A stretch of DNA of 64,000 nucleotides from Botryllus schlosseri (lineage: Eukaryota): assembly GCA_051294905.1 (NCBI GenBank), contig CM119383.1, forward strand, positions 11,594,001-11,658,000, given 5' to 3'. Positions 8,331-55,338 of this stretch are shown one piece after another (within the stretch, counting starts at the first letter, position 1; every line of letters begins with the position of its first letter). The notes below the pieces were generated by a model. It worked only from the letters and a program-made list of their open reading frames with translations. It was not told where the DNA came from and searched no databases. A program made the position numbers and the translations under genes.

Positions 8331-9671
8331 TAGCCTATGTTTGGGCGATTTCAATACCTTTTGACATAGTAGACATAGAGGTCACGAAATGTCATAATGT
8401 AACGAAGTCATTATGCCAACGGGCCCGCCCGGACATGTTTAATTATTATTTACGGGCACTACAATTTCCAAGACACCACACTCAGCTCTACCGGTAAATC
8501 TGATTACGCGAGCAGAGAGAGGATAAAAAATCGATCGCATTATATATGCAATTGACCGATTTAATCATGAATTATGGAAAATTTTCGCGCCAGGCGCGGT
8601 TTGGCGATATAAGCTGACTCACTGCGGTACAACAAATCTCGCTGACAAGTAGCGGTAGCAATTAACGTATAGCGTGTTGGGGGGGTCTGGTTTGGTTTAT
8701 CACCCTATGGGAGACCAAGACCACCGTTCTGGGGGTCCTTACGAAGTGCTGTTTCGGTCATGAGCACATTACGCGGATGTCATCCCGATAACTCGGAAAA
8801 CGGCTATTGAGCACCTCTGACCCTTTGTGACGTTACAATAATATGGCCGTTTTTATCATCTTTGTCTTTCGAAAAACTGCTCTGTGGTAGCCTACACACT
8901 GACCACTGAGTCATAACAGTATCGTCATTGAACTTTAAAAAAAAAAACAGAAGTGTCGTATAGGCCTTGAGAGACGCATTTACTGGAATTGCTTATTGGT
9001 TGCACCGTAATATCATGATGAAGAAATTGGTTAAATAGTCGAGCAGTGTTCTCCACCATGAACGCGTAACAGCTGAGCATGAGCATGCAGCAGACTTGCG
9101 TATGACTGGGAAAAATCGAGTTGAGTCAAGTATTCGGGTACCAGTATGAATACTTGAAAAAAATACAGTTGTACTACATAAAACAGGGCCGGCCAACCCG
9201 TGGCCCACGAGAACGTTTTGAGTGGCCCGCGAGGTAATTTTCGAAATAACTTATATTCTATTATAACTATAATTCTCGCTGATAAAATAGCTAATAGTGG
9301 CAGGGAGCGCATAATTTTGTAACTCGAAAAAAGATAGCGGACATTCAGGCTTATTGCCACGGGGAATTGTGAAAAATTATAAATTGGAAATGATATTATC
9401 TTTCAAAGTCGAAAGACCCGGGCACAAAGAGTACTGCCAGCCTAGAATCTCTTTTGACTCATATCTTTGTTGTCATTCGATGAATGCTTGCCCGAGACGT
9501 TGCAATTTTCGTGACGCGCAATATAATAATAGAAAAATACGGGCGAGTATCAAGCAATTTTACAGCGAAAATATCACAAATATGATATGTATATCTGAAA
9601 TCAAACTAAGAAACAATAGATTCGTAGCTGTTAGCCAGTATTCTGTTGTGATCTATAGCTAACGTGAGATT

Positions 9672-12600
9672 CTACTGAATATCATCAAAGTCGATCACGG
9701 GCGGGTTCACAACTCCGGCAACAAAATTTTCATCTCCAACTGGAACGCAGTCGCGATTGTTCGTGGCTTTCAGTAGACCATTCTCGCATTCGCACACATA
9801 TGAACCGACACTGTTGATGCATTTCGCAGTCGGCCCGCATTTGTTGTCTCCGTTCAAGCATTCGTTAGCGTCTGTAAAGGCAATGTATAGAGACACCTTA
9901 TTTTGACTAACATCTTGGACTCGGACAACTATTGATAATTTCAGTTTTCCAATTATATTACAATTCGACCAAATAGACTAATTAGACCAAATCGTCTAAT
10001 TGGGGCGGAAAACTGGTAACCTCATTCTAATCTAATTTGTGAAATGTTTCGATGCTTTAATTTTAATTCCCATCTGATTTCTGCTTTTCCCTCAAAATTC
10101 AACAATATAACGGTATAGCCCATAGCGCATAGTGTGAAACGAGCCAAGCTTTGTGTACAGAGATTTGCCATTATCATACTAATGAGAATTAACTTTTTTC
10201 CAATTCGTACTTTCATTCAATTTTTTGTGAATTGTAAATTCTGTTATTCTAATTCCAGTCTAATTTGAAATAAACGTGTAGTTATATTTCTCGGGAATCT
10301 AATTTTGGATAGCTGAAAAGTTTCTGTATCTTACAATACGTCTAGCAATAGTCCGCCGCTTCTGCCCGTAATCGACAACGCAATTTGTGGACATTCGGTG
10401 AGCCATGCCCTGAATTGACAAGGAAAATGAGTTTCCTTTGAGTGATGTCATTTTGGTCATGCAGAACAATTGTGAGCAATTCGAAAATTTCGCAATTACA
10501 ATAATGTTGCTTTGTGTCGGTCCGCCAAGAATTTGACCTCAGACGAAAGTCAAACACGGTCTTGTGAGAGATCGAGTGAGAAGTCCGGCATGCATGTACA
10601 ATAGGGCTGTTCAAAAATAGCTTTTTTTCCTCAATCTTGATGGTTACGTGATTAAATCGTTAGGTTGCCTTAAAAAACGACGCACACCAAATTTTAATTC
10701 ATTCCAACCAATAATCGCTGATTTCGTACAGTTTGAAAATTTTGAATTTACCCAAAGATGCAAAAAAAATTTTTGTCAAATTTTTCTGTCAACCCCATGA
10801 AATTGTTGCACTGTCTTCAAAGACGATGCAAAACAACTTTGACTCAATTCCAACCAGCAGAAGCTGAGTTATTTGAGTTTTTCGATGATAATTCTTGGAT
10901 TATCCACCGATCTAGGATAGTGCCCTAATTATCGAAGAAAAACTCAAATAGCTCCGCTTCTACTAGTTGGAATCGAGTCAAATTTGTTTTGCATCGTCTT
11001 TGAAGACAGTGCAACGATTTCATGGGGTTAACAGAAAAATCTGACAAAAACTTTTTTGCATCTTTGGGTAAATTCAAAATTTTCAAACTGTACGAAATCC
11101 GCGATTATTGGTTGGAATGAATTAAAATTTGGTGTGCGCCGTTTTTTAAGGCAACCTAACGATTTAATCACGTAACGAGCAAGATTCAGGAAAAAAGTTT
11201 TTTTTTTAACAGCCCTAATGTACAATGTACATCGACAAATTCCTCGTATCTTTACCATTATATACAAACTGTGCGACAGGTTTAAGCATTCAGACGGTGC
11301 ATAATCCGCTAATGACCAGAAACATAGATCACAGGATAATAATAACTCTCGTTTACGCGGTCACATATAAAATACTGCGGCCTGGTTTGTTTTTAGGAGC
11401 TGATCCATCTCAAGGCGATATTATCTCGCGGGTTAAACATTCGTTCGAAGAATACAATGATGCAGGGCAAAACTTAAATCTAAATGAATATTAAAATGAA
11501 CAATAAATCATGAGTATCAAATCTAATTAAGAGCCGATGTATATCGAGTATCGACACGAGAATGAGTTGTTGAGTTGTCAAATTGACTTCCACCACAGCC
11601 CGGATATGACGGACAAAGCGAACGCGGAAAAAAGAATAACCTTTTCAGGTCTGCCAGGATTAACGTTCACAAGTACAATTTGGTTATTGTGATGTCATAC
11701 AGAAGGTCACATACCTCGACATTGCTTGCCATAAAGAGTCCGTATCATAACATATCCGATCCTGCATTTGCAGGTGTAACTTCCATACGTGTTCACGCAT
11801 TCTTGGTTGCTACTTGGGCATTTCCCATTTCCAATATCCAAACACTCGTTCACGTCTGACAGACATAAATAAGACATGGTTAAAAAGTTAATCGCGCCTC
11901 TCTTACAAGGGAAAATCTATCGCTATGGATAGGCCTATAGACATTGTGCTAAATTTACTCACCAATACACGATCGTTGGTCCGATGCCAACGAGAAACCT
12001 TCGGGACAGGTACACTTTTCAACGCCGTTACTGTGAGTACATTTGTATCTGCAACCGGTCTTGCAGGCATTGGCCTCTGTCAGCGAAATATTCACATAAA
12101 ATCAGCACATAAGTAATTATATCTATTCGGGTCGAAATTAGTAAAAGCTTCATCGATAAAGCACTATTCTATCCGCTAGAGAATGAGCGGATTGACGAAT
12201 TACGTAAGTTTAGGGTCAAGTTTAGAATGAAAATACAACACTGTTTAAAACAGGGCTCTTGTTTAGAATATGTTTTTAATATTTTTTTAATTATTATTTT
12301 CTTATCCACGACCACTTAGGAAAAATGACATCCAAAATTACAATATGTGGTTACGCACTGTTTTGTAAAAACAACACTGAATGTTTCTGACTTTGATTCC
12401 ATTAAAAACAGAGGCTTTTGTTCAAAACATTGTTAAAACGTGTTTAAAAACGAGATTTGTTTTCAATGCGACCGTAATTGTGCACGAGCAATTGAGCACG
12501 CACGAGAAAGTACCAAATTCAAGATACAATAATGCCGCTACGCGGATTGGGTAAGATAAGATAGGCGACATTTGCCTGGGAGTATCTAGTGTTGAAAATA

Positions 12601-52265: not shown

Positions 52266-54060
52266 TCATCGCAGATTTGGATTATATTCTCTAAGTAGTT
52301 CCTTGATCTGGTCATTACTCATGTACTCAGAAGATGTCAGGATGTTCATTATTGCGATGACGTGATTCTCATTCACGCTAGCTATATGAATCTTCCCGTT
52401 CATACCGACGATAGTCTCGAATTTAAAATGTTTTCCAAGCTCGGACATGAGCGCGCAGTCCAAAGACAAAATTTTCCGGATCAAATGAAGCGAAACAGTG
52501 ACTAGTAGCCCATCTGCCGAGACCAGGCCCATTCCGTTGGCTTTTCCAGTAGCCGTGTCTACACAGCTCATTTCAGGCTCCATGTCGTGACCGGCGGATA
52601 TGAGCTTTCCAAAAACGATATCACCGTTCTGTATGTTCGGCTTGTTTCGCTTGGACGCGCCTTCGAATGCCAAGTTATGAAGCATCGCCTGCAGAAATGA
52701 TCAGCATGTAAGGATACTAGATTAGATGACCAATACAGAATTCATCAACATACGCTAATTAATTTCTTATACTTAAAGCTCTGAGGTATTATTGAGGGTG
52801 ATTCCTTTTGAAGCAGGGTTGTAATGACAGTCACGATTTTTTAGTGACTCTACTTGACTTGAGTCAATTTGTGTACCAACTCGACTTGTACTCGAGTTAT
52901 TGAGCATGACTTGAACCAAGTGATATGACTCGAGACTAGGACGGCCAACACAGACATTTCATCGTAACTTCGAAGAATAGTACAGTTACCAAGTGGATTG
53001 AACTGAAAAATGAACAGAGAACATAATGACTTGGACTCGAGTTAAAACACTACGACTCGGACTCGACACTCTACTAGATGACTTGGTGGTAAGGTGAAAA
53101 TGACTCGACTTGACCAGAGTCAAAACAATAAAAGTGAGATTGACTTGTGACTCGGAACCTTGCGACTTGGTTACAAACCCTGATTTGAAGTCGAGTAATG
53201 AGGCTCGAGTTTTAGAGTATCACCCGTTATCATGTCATACACATCTGGAAAATGTGAAAAGCTGACATATATTCTTTTCATTCGACCACCAGTCAGATAT
53301 TTCCAGTTCAGCATGGTCAGGAATAATTTCTCAAGTGTCTACCATATAGATGACATGACATATTGTGACAATACTGCGGGTTCTAAGAAATATAGCTTTA
53401 TGAAAATGCGCAGGATAGCCAGTTGCCAAATCTCTTGGATTTCGTGATGAGAAGGAATTACTCGTACTATAATTCTTAGCCGCATAAATCGAGTACTAAG
53501 CAATACTAAACTAGAATCAACAAAATCAATGCTTGACTAGAATTCGAGTACTCACAAGTCCCAATCATTGAACCCAATCCTACTCATCACAAATCACGAT
53601 TAATATCATCAATTTTAACAACATACCTCAGCTTGAATTGAAGGCATACCATATTATGAATGTTGTTGCAAGAATCTCAAATATCTAATCTCTAATATTC
53701 TTATAAAATTGAAGCCCACTGTTATATACAAGAGGGGCAGATCATATCATCAACACTTACATAATCACTGCTGCCGATATCTACTTTGTACGCATCTCCC
53801 ACTTTACCCATGACAACACCCAGCACCGTCTCTCCCTTTGTCGGAACGTACCGCTTCTGGTGCGATTCCACCCAGAAGGTACATGGTTTCTTGTGCCGAA
53901 ATATTCCTGTTTTGCAAACGATGACGTCATCCAACACTTGTCGAAGGCCTGGCCCCAGCTTGACACGCTCACCGTCGTCTGCTATCGACGCGACAGCGTC
54001 GGTGATCGTCTCTCCAGGCATAACAATCTCGCCTATTACGTCCTTCCACGAGCACTTCAT
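52266..54060 (-). CDS. EXOSC3: Exosome complex component RRP40
   Basis: Exons 54060-53761 and 52688-52266 (GTAAGT...CTGCAG). Motifs VIGEIVMPGE, KLGPGLR, QKRYVP, LAFEGASKRNKPN, MEPEMSC and VGMNGKI. Confidence 0.95.
52814..53182. mobile_element. MITE with gactcgagtc repeats in the EXOSC3 intron (related sequence near 19250-19330)
   Basis: TIR CAGGGTTGTAA/TTACAAACCCTG and TSD TTTTGAAG/ATTTGAAG (7 of 8 match). Confidence 0.8.
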
Positions 54061-54073
54061 TTCCAAGTTTCGA

Positions 54074-54292
54074 TCAAGTTTTACGTGCACGAAGTCTTGA
54101 GGTGCTGCCAGCTTTTACTTTATCTCCGTGTTGCTTCTGATCGTCAGACGGCGACCCGAATATCGCTTGAAAGAGGCTGAACCGCCGTAGAAACAGTTTC
54201 CACACAATCACCCACAGCACAAAGATGAAGGCAAACACTACCGCTACACTTCCGATCACTATGAATATATTTAACACAGTGTCTTGGAGCAT
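54074..54292 (-). CDS. SMIM13: Small integral membrane protein 13-like (72 aa, single TM)
   Basis: MLQDTVLNIFIVIGSVAVVFAFIFVLWVIVWKLFLRRFSLFQAIFG resembles the SMIM13 signature VWHLFLSKFKFLRELVG after a TM helix (recalled, not searched). Acceptor CTTTTCTTTTCTAG lies 20 nt upstream. Confidence 0.72.
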   Translation of the reverse strand: MLQDTVLNIFIVIGSVAVVFAFIFVLWVIVWKLFLRRFSLFQAIFGSPSDDQKQHGDKVKAGSTSRLRARKT

Positions 54293-54879
54293 GCTATTCC
54301 GATAGCAGCAATCTAGAAAAGAAAAGTACATTCGAAAACACACGCCAGCCAGTGACCTCAACACCTAAGAGTTGAGAGAAACATACGAAGCCAGGAAAAT
54401 TGAAGCTAGATTGAGGAAAAATTTTCCACCCTTTGCTACATGAGAATGCGTACAAGTCGCTCAATAAAAGCAACAATATGATTGAAATAAGAAATCAATA
54501 AACCAACCGCGTTGGCAATCAATGCAATGAAACAAGAGTTCATAGCTTGTGGGGTCACGCTTGACTAGGCTTGGGAGTTAGAGCAATTGACACACTTGGT
54601 TAAAACCCAGCTCCCAATCAGATGATTCTGAGTGTAAATTGTATTGGGAGTTGGAGTTTTGAGCAAGATGCCAAGACAGAGTCTTAATTACGTTCATGAA
54701 AGGCCCGGGCGTATCCTACAACACGAGTCGCTACTTCAAAGCCGACCGAGCTCTCATCAAAATGGCGAATTGTAACTTGACGGAATCAGGGTCGCAATAT
54801 GAAAATACATTTAGAATCAGGATTGTACTACCATAGGAATTTGTGAGATTCCCCAGCCCTAAAAACGGGCTTACGTATA

Positions 54880-55338
54880 TCATGAAGAATCAGGAATGTT
54901 GTCACCATCATATGCAATGTTTCCCATCGGAGAGATATAGTAGCCTTCAAAAGTTTGTTGCGCTAGAGATGCAATATCCGGGTTGGTTTCAATTACATCA
55001 TCATTTCTCAAAGGTAGCTCAATATCTTCCAGCACGGTGACCATAGGCTCAATGCCTTCAGTGTCCACGAGCCGGATTTGATCCGCAAATCGAATCGCAG
55101 ACTCGAGTCTTTCCACAGCTTTCGTATCTTCGAAATTTACCAACGACAAACGCTCCAAGCGCTTTGCCAACTCAAGTGATACTTTTGTAGGCGGAGGGAG
55201 TTCAGCTTCTGAAGTATGTTTCCAAATAGGCTTAGTGGGGATAAGATCAGATGCTTTCATCAAAGCGGTGTAAGTTGATAATGCTCTGCAACACGGAATC
55301 CCCAAGAGCTTTGGAAGTCTTGCGACACAGCTCATCAT
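54880..55338 (-). CDS. GATC: Mitochondrial glutamyl-tRNA(Gln) amidotransferase subunit C, intronless
   Basis: N-terminal presequence-like region, then LERLSLVNF..AVERLESAIRFADQI..VDTEGIEPM..LRND..EGYYISP.GNI. Confidence 0.9.
   Translation of the reverse strand: MMSCVARLPKLLGIPCCRALSTYTALMKASDLIPTKPIWKHTSEAELPPPTKVSLELAKRLERLSLVNFEDTKAVERLESAIRFADQIRLVDTEGIEPMVTVLEDIELPLRNDDVIETNPDIASLAQQTFEGYYISPMGNIAYDGDNIPDSS

What the first reader, a model, noticed from the sequence alone, without database searches (positions are those of the whole stretch)
53761..54312. Candidate bicistronic mRNA: SMIM13 membrane microprotein 13 nt upstream of EXOSC3 on one exon
Seen: the SMIM13-like stop (TGA 54076-54074) is followed by only TCGAAACTTGGAA and then the EXOSC3 ATG (54060) in a different frame. 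The spacer has no AG and no room for a promoter or poly(A) signal. From the acceptor at 54313 to 54060 the only ATG in any frame is the SMIM13 start, although roughly 3 would be expected in about 230 nt at uniform composition. The SMIM13 start context is agcATGc and the EXOSC3 context is gaaATGa. The EXOSC3 N-terminus (VIGEIVMPGE) aligns with conserved RRP40 sequence, which supports 54060 as the start. Known: eukaryotic bicistronic mRNAs exist (e.g. SNURF-SNRPN, MOCS2), and AUG depletion is typical of leaky scanning. Inference: two unrelated conserved proteins are made from one mature mRNA, coupling an essential exosome subunit to a membrane microprotein. I am not aware of this pairing being described.
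Basis: partly seen in the sequence, partly recalled or inferred. Interest (0 to 1): 0.85.

Follow-up and report, generated by a model that had tools for sequence, protein, structure and literature searches.

The report
Sea-squirt two-protein mRNA: SMIM13 plus EXOSC3
In this sea-squirt genome a tiny membrane protein gene (SMIM13) and the essential RNA-exosome subunit gene EXOSC3 sit 13 bases apart on one exon, and transcripts and gene structures of related sea squirts indicate that both are carried on a single mature messenger RNA, an arrangement for which I found no published description.

Summary
On the minus strand a 72-codon ORF (54292-54074) passes Pfam's threshold for DUF4750/SMIM13. After a 13-nt spacer with no AG comes the RRP40/EXOSC3 start (54060), which aligns with ascidian orthologue N-termini.

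The bicistronic reading is supported by relatives, not by RNA from this species. The order SMIM13 then EXOSC3, with spacers of -4 to +33 nt, recurs in five other ascidians although synonymous sites are saturated. One transcript contig (L003) starts with the last 7 nt of a published tunicate spliced leader. These 7 nt are joined exactly at the acceptor upstream of SMIM13. L003 then runs through both ORFs, with the EXOSC3 intron removed, to AATAAA. In two species an inferred intron joins the SMIM13 exon to the EXOSC3 exon, which supplies SMIM13's last two codons and a stop overlapping the EXOSC3 ATG (ATGA).

Three corrections apply:
- ATG depletion is weak (0 seen, 1.7 expected, P about 0.08).
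- The SMIM13 AUG is not in weak context (purine at -3 in all six species).
- The mRNA is SL trans-spliced and probably lies downstream of GatC in an operon.

How EXOSC3 is translated is unresolved (leaky scanning, reinitiation, or both). The scan noted other candidate operons in this genome, but not this pair. This is a new member of a known kind.

The parts
54880..55338 (-). GatC (mitochondrial Glu-tRNA(Gln) amidotransferase subunit C) single-exon coding sequence. It is the probable upstream cistron of the same transcription unit.
   Evidence: Pfam GatC E=2.5e-8. GatC lies upstream of SMIM13 and EXOSC3 in L002, L004, L006 and L007. Contigs L002 and L004, inferred to be RNA-derived, bridge GatC to SMIM13.
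54315..54879 (-). Stretch between the GatC stop and the SMIM13 acceptor. I read it as GatC 3' UTR plus outron.
   Evidence: Sequence. The equivalent stretch is retained in contigs L002 and L004 and is replaced by spliced-leader sequence in L003.
54313..54331 (-). 3' splice acceptor (pyrimidine run followed by AG at 54314-54313). I infer that it is an SL trans-splice acceptor.
   Evidence: An acceptor-like site lies 2-24 nt upstream of the SMIM13 ATG in all five relatives. In L003 the sequence 5' of this AG is TATTAAG, the 3' end of a published tunicate SL.
54293..54312 (-). 20-nt 5' leader between the acceptor and the SMIM13 AUG. It contains no ATG.
54074..54292 (-). SMIM13/DUF4750 coding sequence of 72 codons plus TGA. 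It encodes an N-terminal hydrophobic, transmembrane-like stretch, a WKLFLRRF motif and a basic RLRAR tail.
   Evidence: Pfam PF15938 E=1.2e-11, alignment A3, and dN/dS of 0.13-0.36.
54061..54073 (-). 13-nt spacer between the two ORFs. It has no AG, no ATG and no poly(A) signal.
53761..54060 (-). EXOSC3/RRP40 coding exon 1 (100 codons), contiguous with SMIM13 on the same exon. The donor GTAAGT starts at 53760.
   Evidence: Pfam Rrp40_N and RRP40_S1. The N-terminus aligns with ascidian RRP40 proteins.
52689..53760 (-). EXOSC3 intron of 1,072 nt (GT...AG). Its position is shared with L006 and Clavelina.
52266..52688 (-). EXOSC3/RRP40 coding exon 2 (rest of the S1 domain, the KH domain, and the stop codon).
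   Evidence: Pfam RRP40_S1 E=3.8e-19 and KH_6 E=6e-14. The acceptor is visible.

Best explanation
The window comes from an ascidian of the stolidobranch type. I infer this from earlier scan notes and from the nearest EXOSC3 relatives. GatC, SMIM13 and EXOSC3 lie head to tail on the minus strand. I propose that the primary transcript is trans-spliced with the tunicate spliced leader at the acceptor at 54313. That would give a compact mature mRNA made of the SL, a 20-nt leader, the SMIM13 ORF, a 13-nt spacer and the EXOSC3 ORF (two exons), followed by poly(A). Both proteins would be made from this one mRNA. SMIM13 would be translated from the first AUG by ordinary scanning. EXOSC3 would be translated by ribosomes that either scan past the SMIM13 AUG (leaky scanning, helped by the near absence of other AUGs) or terminate at the SMIM13 stop and reinitiate at the AUG a few bases away. 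The pair cannot be resolved into two intact mRNAs, because there is no acceptor AG and no poly(A) signal between or near the two ORFs.

Shown: the sequence layout, the identity of both proteins, conservation of the layout in five other ascidians, and an SL-bearing spliced transcript contig with both ORFs in a relative.

Inferred: that the same mRNA is made in this species, that GatC belongs to the same operon, and the route by which EXOSC3 is translated.
For: 1. The layout and protein identities hold.
2. L003, from run SRR32906212, is identical to L002 from the acceptor onwards. Its first 7 nt are TATTAAG instead of CTTCCAG. TATTAAG is the 3' end of the 25-nt tunicate SL listed as 'Chordata 1' in PMC3795323. 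L003 contains SMIM13 (32-256), EXOSC3 as one uninterrupted 240-codon ORF (290-1012), and ends at AATAAA.
3. L001 and L004 also carry both ORFs, with the old EXOSC3 intron position (shared by the window, L006 and Clavelina) spliced out.
4. In the genomic contig L006, donor CGG|GTCTGT and acceptor ...CAACAG|GTGCAATGA would complete SMIM13 as ...RARRVQ*. That matches orthologue C-termini (...RARRVQS*), and the TGA overlaps the EXOSC3 ATG. Clavelina (L009) allows the same layout.
5. Spacers are -4, -4, 3, 13, 24 and 33 nt in six species although dS is saturated. SMIM13 dN/dS is 0.13-0.36.
6. None of the six species has AATAAA or ATTAAA in the SMIM13 ORF or spacer.
7. All six upstream ORFs pass Pfam's DUF4750 threshold.
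8. Four of six species have no ATG between the two starts. The four ATGs in the other two species have a pyrimidine at -3 and open ORFs of 3-19 codons that end before the EXOSC3 ATG.
Against: 1. There are no RNA data for the window's own species. The mRNA structure is transferred from relatives whose EXOSC3 is 53-79% identical over exon 1.
2. I could not look up the library type of the Logan runs. That they are RNA-derived is inferred from the missing intron and the SL junction.
3. Only 7 nt of SL are present in L003, and 2 of them (AG) are shared with the genomic acceptor.
4. The SMIM13 AUG has a purine at -3 in all six species, which argues against much leaky scanning.
5. A 72-codon first ORF is long for efficient reinitiation, and no TURBS-like UGGGA motif is present.
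6. ATG scarcity is statistically weak: window P about 0.08, and pooled 4 seen against 7.8 expected, P about 0.05 on non-independent species.
7. A monocistronic EXOSC3 mRNA from an internal acceptor in the SMIM13 coding sequence (for example the pyrimidine-rich ...CTCTTTCAAG) or from an internal promoter is not excluded.
8. The pairing is absent from the Styela clava copy and from several other tunicate contigs.
Confidence: 0.72

Rival explanations
1. Alternative processing. The bicistronic RNA mainly serves SMIM13. EXOSC3 protein comes chiefly from a separate monocistronic mRNA, made either by SL trans-splicing at an acceptor inside the SMIM13 coding sequence (each pre-mRNA then yields one product or the other) or from an internal promoter.
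For: Ascidians resolve abutted genes by SL trans-splicing as a rule (PMC1488885; PMC2760879). Pyrimidine-rich ...TTCAAG or CAG sites sit at the conserved FIQA motif of SMIM13 in every species. In L006 and L009 a good acceptor lies 5 nt before the EXOSC3 ATG and could also take the SL. In L001 the TAG stop itself ends a fair acceptor. The region downstream of such sites has no ATG. Styela clava has a stand-alone EXOSC3 with acceptor-like sites upstream. The first AUG is in good context and the first ORF is long, which makes downstream translation inefficient.
Against: No transcript contig starting at such an internal site was recovered. The contigs from the four runs all pass through the junction. 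The FIQA-encoding sequence is explained by protein conservation across animals. In the window any AG upstream of 54060 lies inside the SMIM13 coding sequence, so its use destroys SMIM13.
Confidence: 0.18
2. The SMIM13-like ORF acts mainly as a long regulatory upstream ORF that sets EXOSC3 output, and its peptide has little function of its own.
For: Its position immediately upstream of an essential gene's start, and its faster evolution than EXOSC3 or GatC (window against L002: 49% identity, compared with 79% and 82%).
Against: The ORF is a recognisable orthologue of an animal-wide protein family and passes Pfam's threshold in all six species. The hydrophobic N-terminal stretch, the WKLFLxRF motif and the basic tail are conserved. 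dN/dS is 0.13-0.36 at saturated dS. No other SMIM13 copy was seen in the material examined, but whole genomes were not searched.
Confidence: 0.05
3. The two are independent genes that merely lie close together. The joint contigs are assembly artefacts or unprocessed pre-mRNA.
For: Short-read de Bruijn contigs can thread rare pre-mRNA reads. L002 and L004 clearly include unprocessed upstream sequence.
Against: Thirteen nucleotides leave no room for a promoter, and there is no poly(A) signal or acceptor. L003 has processed ends on both sides. In L006 the splice-completed SMIM13 stop sits on the EXOSC3 exon. The layout is conserved in six species.
Confidence: 0.05

Closest known systems
Animal bicistronic mRNAs that encode two conserved proteins (SNURF-SNRPN, MOCS2A/MOCS2B, Drosophila dicistronic genes, uORF-encoded microproteins such as the MIEF1 microprotein). 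These examples are from my own knowledge, not from a tool.
   Same: A short conserved upstream ORF and a longer downstream ORF sit on one capped, polyadenylated mRNA. The first ORF has few or no internal AUGs. The two proteins are unrelated.
   Different: Here the mRNA is SL trans-spliced, in an animal that normally uses that leader to separate adjacent genes. The pairing of SMIM13 with EXOSC3 is different, and I found no paper on it. In two lineages an intron bridges the two cistrons and the stop and start overlap (ATGA).
Ciona-type SL-resolved operons without intercistronic DNA (Satou et al. 2006, PMC1488885; Satou et al. 2008, PMC2760879)
   Same: These are same-strand genes less than 100 nt apart in an ascidian. 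The downstream unit is preceded by an SL acceptor. GatC followed by SMIM13 looks like such an operon junction.
   Different: In Ciona operons the downstream gene has its own acceptor and the upstream mRNA is polyadenylated at that AG, which gives monocistronic mRNAs. Between SMIM13 and EXOSC3 in the window there is no AG and no poly(A) signal, and a relative's SL-bearing mRNA keeps both ORFs.
Termination-reinitiation on bicistronic viral RNAs (calicivirus VP1/VP2 and influenza B M1/BM2, which use TURBS elements). This comparison is from my own knowledge.
   Same: The stop and restart codons overlap or lie within a few tens of nucleotides (ATGA in L006 and L009; 3-33 nt elsewhere).
   Different: No UGGGA-type motif lies upstream in any species, and there is no unusual RNA structure at the junction (z = +0.85). 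The mechanism is not tested.

Membership tests
SMIM13 / Pfam DUF4750 (PF15938) | Profile match above Pfam's gathering score | tested here: met
   44.5 bits against a cutoff of 27, E=1.2e-11. The five relatives score 38-48 bits.
SMIM13 / Pfam DUF4750 (PF15938) | Protein of about 65-95 aa with one N-terminal hydrophobic, transmembrane-like stretch followed by a W-x-(I/L)-(V/A)-W-K-x-F-L-x-R-F motif | tested here: met
   In alignment A3 with amphioxus, mollusc and arthropod SMIM13, W27, W31, K32, L35 and R37 are invariant. Named SMIM13 proteins are among the hits.
RRP40 / EXOSC3 | Rrp40 N-terminal domain, S1 domain and KH domain, in that order | tested here: met
   Rrp40_N, RRP40_S1 and KH_6 on the two exons. 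The protein is 53-79% identical over exon 1 to ascidian RRP40 proteins, including the named Styela clava protein.
Eukaryotic bicistronic mature mRNA | Both ORFs on one processed mRNA (5' cap or SL, introns removed, poly(A) signal) | tested here: inconclusive
   Met in a relative: L003 has an SL 3' end at the acceptor, both ORFs, a spliced EXOSC3 and a terminal AATAAA. There are no RNA data for the window's species.
Eukaryotic bicistronic mature mRNA | Both ORFs are conserved protein-coding sequences | tested here: met
Eukaryotic bicistronic mature mRNA | Both ORFs are translated from that mRNA | not testable with these tools
   This needs Ribo-seq or reporter assays.
SL-resolved operon pair (Ciona type), applied to SMIM13 and EXOSC3 | A trans-splice acceptor AG between the upstream stop and the downstream ATG, with the upstream mRNA polyadenylated there | tested here: not met
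   The 13-nt spacer has no AG. The last AG lies 37 nt before the ATG, inside the SMIM13 coding sequence. No AATAAA or ATTAAA is present.
SL-resolved operon pair (Ciona type), applied to GatC and SMIM13-EXOSC3 | Same-strand neighbours that are co-transcribed, with the downstream unit SL trans-spliced | tested here: inconclusive
   The same strand and order occur in four relatives. Contigs L002 and L004 bridge the gap. An SL junction is seen in L003. However, the gap is 290-970 nt and GatC's poly(A) site is unknown.
Leaky-scanning bicistron | First AUG in weak context and no other AUG before the second start | tested here: inconclusive
   The window, L002, L004 and L006 have no internal ATG. L001 and L009 each have two, in weak context. 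The depletion is weak statistically. The first AUG has a purine at -3 in all six species.
TURBS-type termination-reinitiation | Stop-start proximity plus an upstream 18S-complementary UGGGA motif | tested here: not met
   Proximity is met (-4 to +33 nt). No TGGGA occurs in any species.

The most novel reading that the evidence does not exclude
An ancient ascidian operon SMIM13 followed by EXOSC3 was turned into an obligate bicistronic mRNA. A donor inside SMIM13 captured the EXOSC3 trans-splice acceptor as a cis acceptor. That state is still seen in L006 and Clavelina, with an ATGA stop-start overlap. Later intron loss gave the single exon seen in this window. EXOSC3, an essential exosome subunit, is then translated mainly by termination-coupled reinitiation after a 72-codon ORF, without a viral-type TURBS element. 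That would be a cellular chordate example of prokaryote-like translational coupling.
Probability: 0.25. Interest if true: 0.75.

Novelty: new member of a known kind. Interest (0 to 1): 0.55.

Why it matters
Ascidians have a general way to cut polycistronic transcripts into single-gene mRNAs. Here, a pair of unrelated conserved genes appears to have stayed unresolved on one mRNA across deeply diverged ascidian lineages (stolidobranch types and Clavelina).

That ties the output of an essential RNA-exosome cap subunit to a membrane microprotein of unknown function. It also offers a natural system, testable by embryo electroporation in ascidians, for asking how a chordate ribosome reaches a second long ORF. 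The candidate routes are leaky scanning, reinitiation, and in some species bypass through a small upstream ORF.

The finding is also a warning for annotation. Pipelines miss the small ORF (in Clavelina the SMIM13 ORF is not among the genes called at that locus) or fuse it to EXOSC3 (P0126).

Tried and rejected
1. An exact-sequence look-up of the window's SMIM13 protein found nothing. The species itself is not in the collection.
2. The Ciona 16-nt SL and the 25-nt tunicate SL were both searched in the window with up to 3 mismatches, and neither matched. There is no SL gene or SL copy here.
3. TATTAAG does not occur elsewhere in L002, so it does not come from a nearby cis exon.
4. RNA folding of the junction (54140-54010) gave z = +0.85, so there is no special structure.
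5. The bacterial-type promoter and terminator scan is irrelevant for a eukaryote and showed nothing above chance.
6. A TURBS-like UGGGA motif is absent.
8. Ciona and Phallusia could not be checked. Their RRP40 proteins (P0013, P0015) have no contig on record, and no tunicate SMIM13 with a name was returned.
9. The copepod-like 79-aa SMIM13 hits (P0181 to P0183) are not tunicate and were dropped.
10. The contig encoding P0126 could not be read because no DNA was held for it.
11. Matsumoto et al. 2010 (PMC2860165) is not in the paper library.
Full report
**What is in the window**

On the minus strand a single-exon GatC gene (55338-54880) is followed by 565 nt of non-coding sequence. Then comes a pyrimidine run ending in AG (54314-54313) and a 20-nt leader without ATG. 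A 72-codon ORF follows (ATG 54292, TGA 54076-54074). After a 13-nt spacer (TCGAAACTTGGAA) an ATG at 54060 opens 100 codons that end at a GTAAGT donor (53760). A 1,072-nt intron ends at ...TTTCTGCAG, and exon 2 (52688-52266) completes the protein.

Pfam assigns the 72-aa ORF to DUF4750, the SMIM13 family, at 44.5 bits against a gathering score of 27 (E=1.2e-11). It assigns the two downstream exons to Rrp40_N, RRP40_S1 and KH_6, and the upstream ORF to GatC. The spacer has no AG. The only ATG from the acceptor to 54060 is the SMIM13 start. No AATAAA or ATTAAA occurs in the ORF or spacer. The last AG before 54060 lies 37 nt upstream, inside the SMIM13 coding sequence.

**What organism**

Earlier notes of this scan describe the genome as a sea squirt with a 25-letter spliced leader. 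These notes are leads, not evidence. Independently, the best relatives of the EXOSC3 protein are ascidian: Styela clava at 64% over exon 1, an unnamed Logan protein at 79%, and then Ciona, Clavelina and Phallusia. Their N-termini start at the same position as ATG 54060 (for example MKCPAKE... in Styela and MKCSAKD... in P0005). This supports 54060 as the true start.

**Relatives carry the same pair**

The only close protein hit of the SMIM13 ORF (P0001, 55% identical) lies on a 1,711-nt Logan contig, L001. There it is followed after 24 nt by a 237-codon uninterrupted RRP40 ORF. The other loci, found by starting from the RRP40 and SMIM13 hits, are these:
- **L002 and L003:** two runs, with identical sequence over the overlap. 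The order is GatC C-terminus, SMIM13, a 33-nt spacer, then EXOSC3.
- **L004:** GatC, SMIM13, a 3-nt spacer, then EXOSC3.
- **L006 and L007:** genomic contigs of 14.8 and 6.3 kb with GatC, SMIM13 and the two EXOSC3 exons.
- **L009 (Clavelina lepadiformis):** a DUF4750 ORF on the same strand, 1.2 kb upstream of EXOSC3.

All six upstream ORFs pass Pfam's DUF4750 threshold. They align with amphioxus, mollusc and arthropod SMIM13, with W27, W31, K32, L35 and R37 invariant. Synonymous sites between these species are saturated (dS above 1 or not computable). SMIM13 dN/dS is 0.13-0.36 where it can be computed. So the ORF is kept as coding sequence, and its adjacency to EXOSC3 has survived deep divergence.

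**Evidence for one mature mRNA**

1. The EXOSC3 intron position after ...GSSDY/Q is shared by the window, L006 and Clavelina. It is absent from L001 to L004, which fits those contigs being RNA-derived.

2. L003 maps to L002 positions 1273-2325 without mismatch, apart from its first 7 nt: TATTAAG in L003 against CTTCCAG in L002. The divergence falls exactly at the AG of the pyrimidine-rich acceptor 24 nt upstream of the SMIM13 ATG. TATTAAG occurs nowhere else in L002. A review of spliced leaders lists one 25-nt leader for the seven chordate species in its database, and it ends in ...GTATTAAG (PMC3795323). L003 is therefore best read as an SL trans-spliced mRNA. It contains SMIM13 and the whole spliced EXOSC3 ORF, and it ends one base after an AATAAA that starts 35 nt past the EXOSC3 stop. 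An acceptor-like site sits 2-24 nt upstream of the SMIM13 ATG in every species, including the window.

3. In L006 the unspliced SMIM13 ORF runs on into 13 unconserved codons. However, donor CGG|GTCTGT and acceptor ...ATCAACAG|GTGCAATGAAA join in phase to give ...RARRVQ-stop. That matches the orthologue ends (...RARRVQS...RARRNQT...RARQAQS), and the TGA overlaps the EXOSC3 ATG as ATGA. Clavelina allows the same layout. Either of two phase-0 donors, joined to the acceptor ...TTCTGTAG|GAGGAATGA, gives ...EE-stop overlapping the ATG. If these introns are real, SMIM13 can be completed only on the EXOSC3 exon. They are inferred from sequence, not from junction reads.

4. In the window a Ciona-type resolution is impossible without truncating SMIM13. 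In that scheme the upstream mRNA is polyadenylated at the downstream gene's acceptor AG (PMC1488885; PMC2760879). The window has no AG after the SMIM13 stop and no poly(A) signal.

**Context: probably part of an operon**

GatC precedes SMIM13 on the same strand in the window, L002, L004, L006 and L007, at 290-970 nt. Contigs L002 and L004, inferred to be RNA-derived, run from GatC through the gap into SMIM13 and EXOSC3. Together with the SL junction in L003, this suggests a transcription unit in which GatC is the upstream cistron and SMIM13 plus EXOSC3 form a trans-spliced downstream unit that stays bicistronic. I put this at about 60%. GatC's poly(A) site is unknown, and no GatC lies near the Clavelina pair.

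**Where the pairing is absent**

- Styela clava has an intronless EXOSC3 inside an intron of an opposite-strand gene. No SMIM13 or GatC lies within 6 kb. It looks like a relocated, possibly retroposed, copy.
- Four contigs of other, unnamed tunicate-like RRP40 genes (L010 to L013) are intronless and have no upstream SMIM13.
- A genome of an organism I could not identify (L008) has SMIM13 between unrelated genes.
- Ciona and Phallusia could not be examined with these tools.

**How EXOSC3 might be translated**

*Leaky scanning.* Four of six species have no ATG at all between the two starts. The four ATGs in L001 and L009 have a pyrimidine at -3 and open ORFs of 3-19 codons that end before the EXOSC3 ATG. 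The statistics are weak, however. Resampling synonymous codons for the same proteins with local codon usage gives an expectation of 0.4-2.0 ATGs per species. For the window this is 0 seen against 1.7 expected (P about 0.08). Pooled, it is 4 seen against 7.8 expected (P about 0.05), on species that are not independent. Neighbouring coding sequences carry 1.5-4.6 out-of-frame ATGs per 216 nt.

*Termination-reinitiation.* The stop-to-start distance stays between -4 and +33 nt in all six species despite saturated divergence, and leaky scanning does not require that. Against this route, a 72-76-codon first ORF is long for reinitiation, no UGGGA-type motif is present, and the junction has no unusual structure (z = +0.85).

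*Species-specific extras.* In L002 and L003 the mRNA begins ...AAG|ATG CGT AGT CCC TAG, a 4-codon uORF that ends 9 nt before the SMIM13 AUG. In L004 a 20-codon uORF starts just after the acceptor and overlaps the SMIM13 AUG. Either uORF could send ribosomes past SMIM13 to the next AUG, which is EXOSC3's. The window's leader has no such AUG.

I cannot choose between these routes. I regard a mixture as most likely.

**Rivals**

The main rival (about 18%) is that EXOSC3 protein comes chiefly from a separate monocistronic mRNA. In L006 and L009 it could arise at the intron acceptor, which could also take the SL. This is not excluded. However, no such contig was seen, and the internal site is explained by the conserved FIQA protein motif. 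The readings as a pure regulatory uORF or as an assembly artefact are each unlikely (about 5% each), for the reasons given under rival explanations.

**Novelty**

Full-text searches for SMIM13 (49 papers), for EXOSC3 with 'bicistronic', and for bicistronic, Ciona and trans-splicing together returned nothing on this pairing or on unresolved bicistronic mature mRNAs in ascidians. Bicistronic animal mRNAs and ascidian operons are both known kinds. This is a new, conserved example that combines them. The scan had flagged other candidate operons in this genome (MDH2-srGAP, and TOM7/SKA2/XRN1), but not this pair.

Noticed in passing
L005:6001-6732 (Styela clava OZ123518.1): The EXOSC3 gene is intronless. 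It sits inside an intron of an opposite-strand gene with faint Sushi/EPTP matches, without SMIM13 or GatC nearby, and has acceptor-like sites just upstream. It looks like a relocated or retroposed copy that escaped the bicistronic arrangement.
   Followed up: partly
P0126 (Logan SRR25569784, 1,481-nt contig; DNA not retrievable): One 215-aa called ORF fuses an N-terminally truncated SMIM13 to EXOSC3 exon 1. It does so through a frame change in the SMIM13 tail, then reads into the intron. This is either a real indel creating a fusion ORF in that species or a sequencing error.
   Followed up: no
L003:8-22 and L002:1280-1294; L004:929-991: Upstream AUGs lie right after the SL acceptor. L002 and L003 have a 4-codon uORF ending 9 nt before the SMIM13 AUG. 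L004 has a 20-codon uORF overlapping the SMIM13 AUG. Neither is present in the window or in L001.
   Followed up: partly
L001:413-664, L002:1304-1564, L004:948-1178: In these three species SMIM13 and EXOSC3 are in the same reading frame. In L001 only a single TAG separates them, and sense codons run from there to the ATG. Stop-codon readthrough would therefore give a fusion protein. The window is out of frame (232 nt between the two ATGs), so this is probably coincidence.
   Followed up: no
L009:1219-2400 (-), Clavelina lepadiformis: A 393-aa called gene with a herpesvirus Glycoprotein_B (PF00606) match lies about 5.6 kb upstream of EXOSC3. It may be an endogenous herpes-like element.
   Followed up: no
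P0122 (823 aa): A repetitive protein gave 13 partial matches to the SMIM13 profile. It is most likely a translated tandem repeat rather than a true relative.
   Followed up: no
L012:4289-5344 and 9251-9820: A mariner/DDE_3 transposase ORF and a reverse-transcriptase ORF flank the stand-alone EXOSC3 of an unnamed tunicate-like contig.
   Followed up: no
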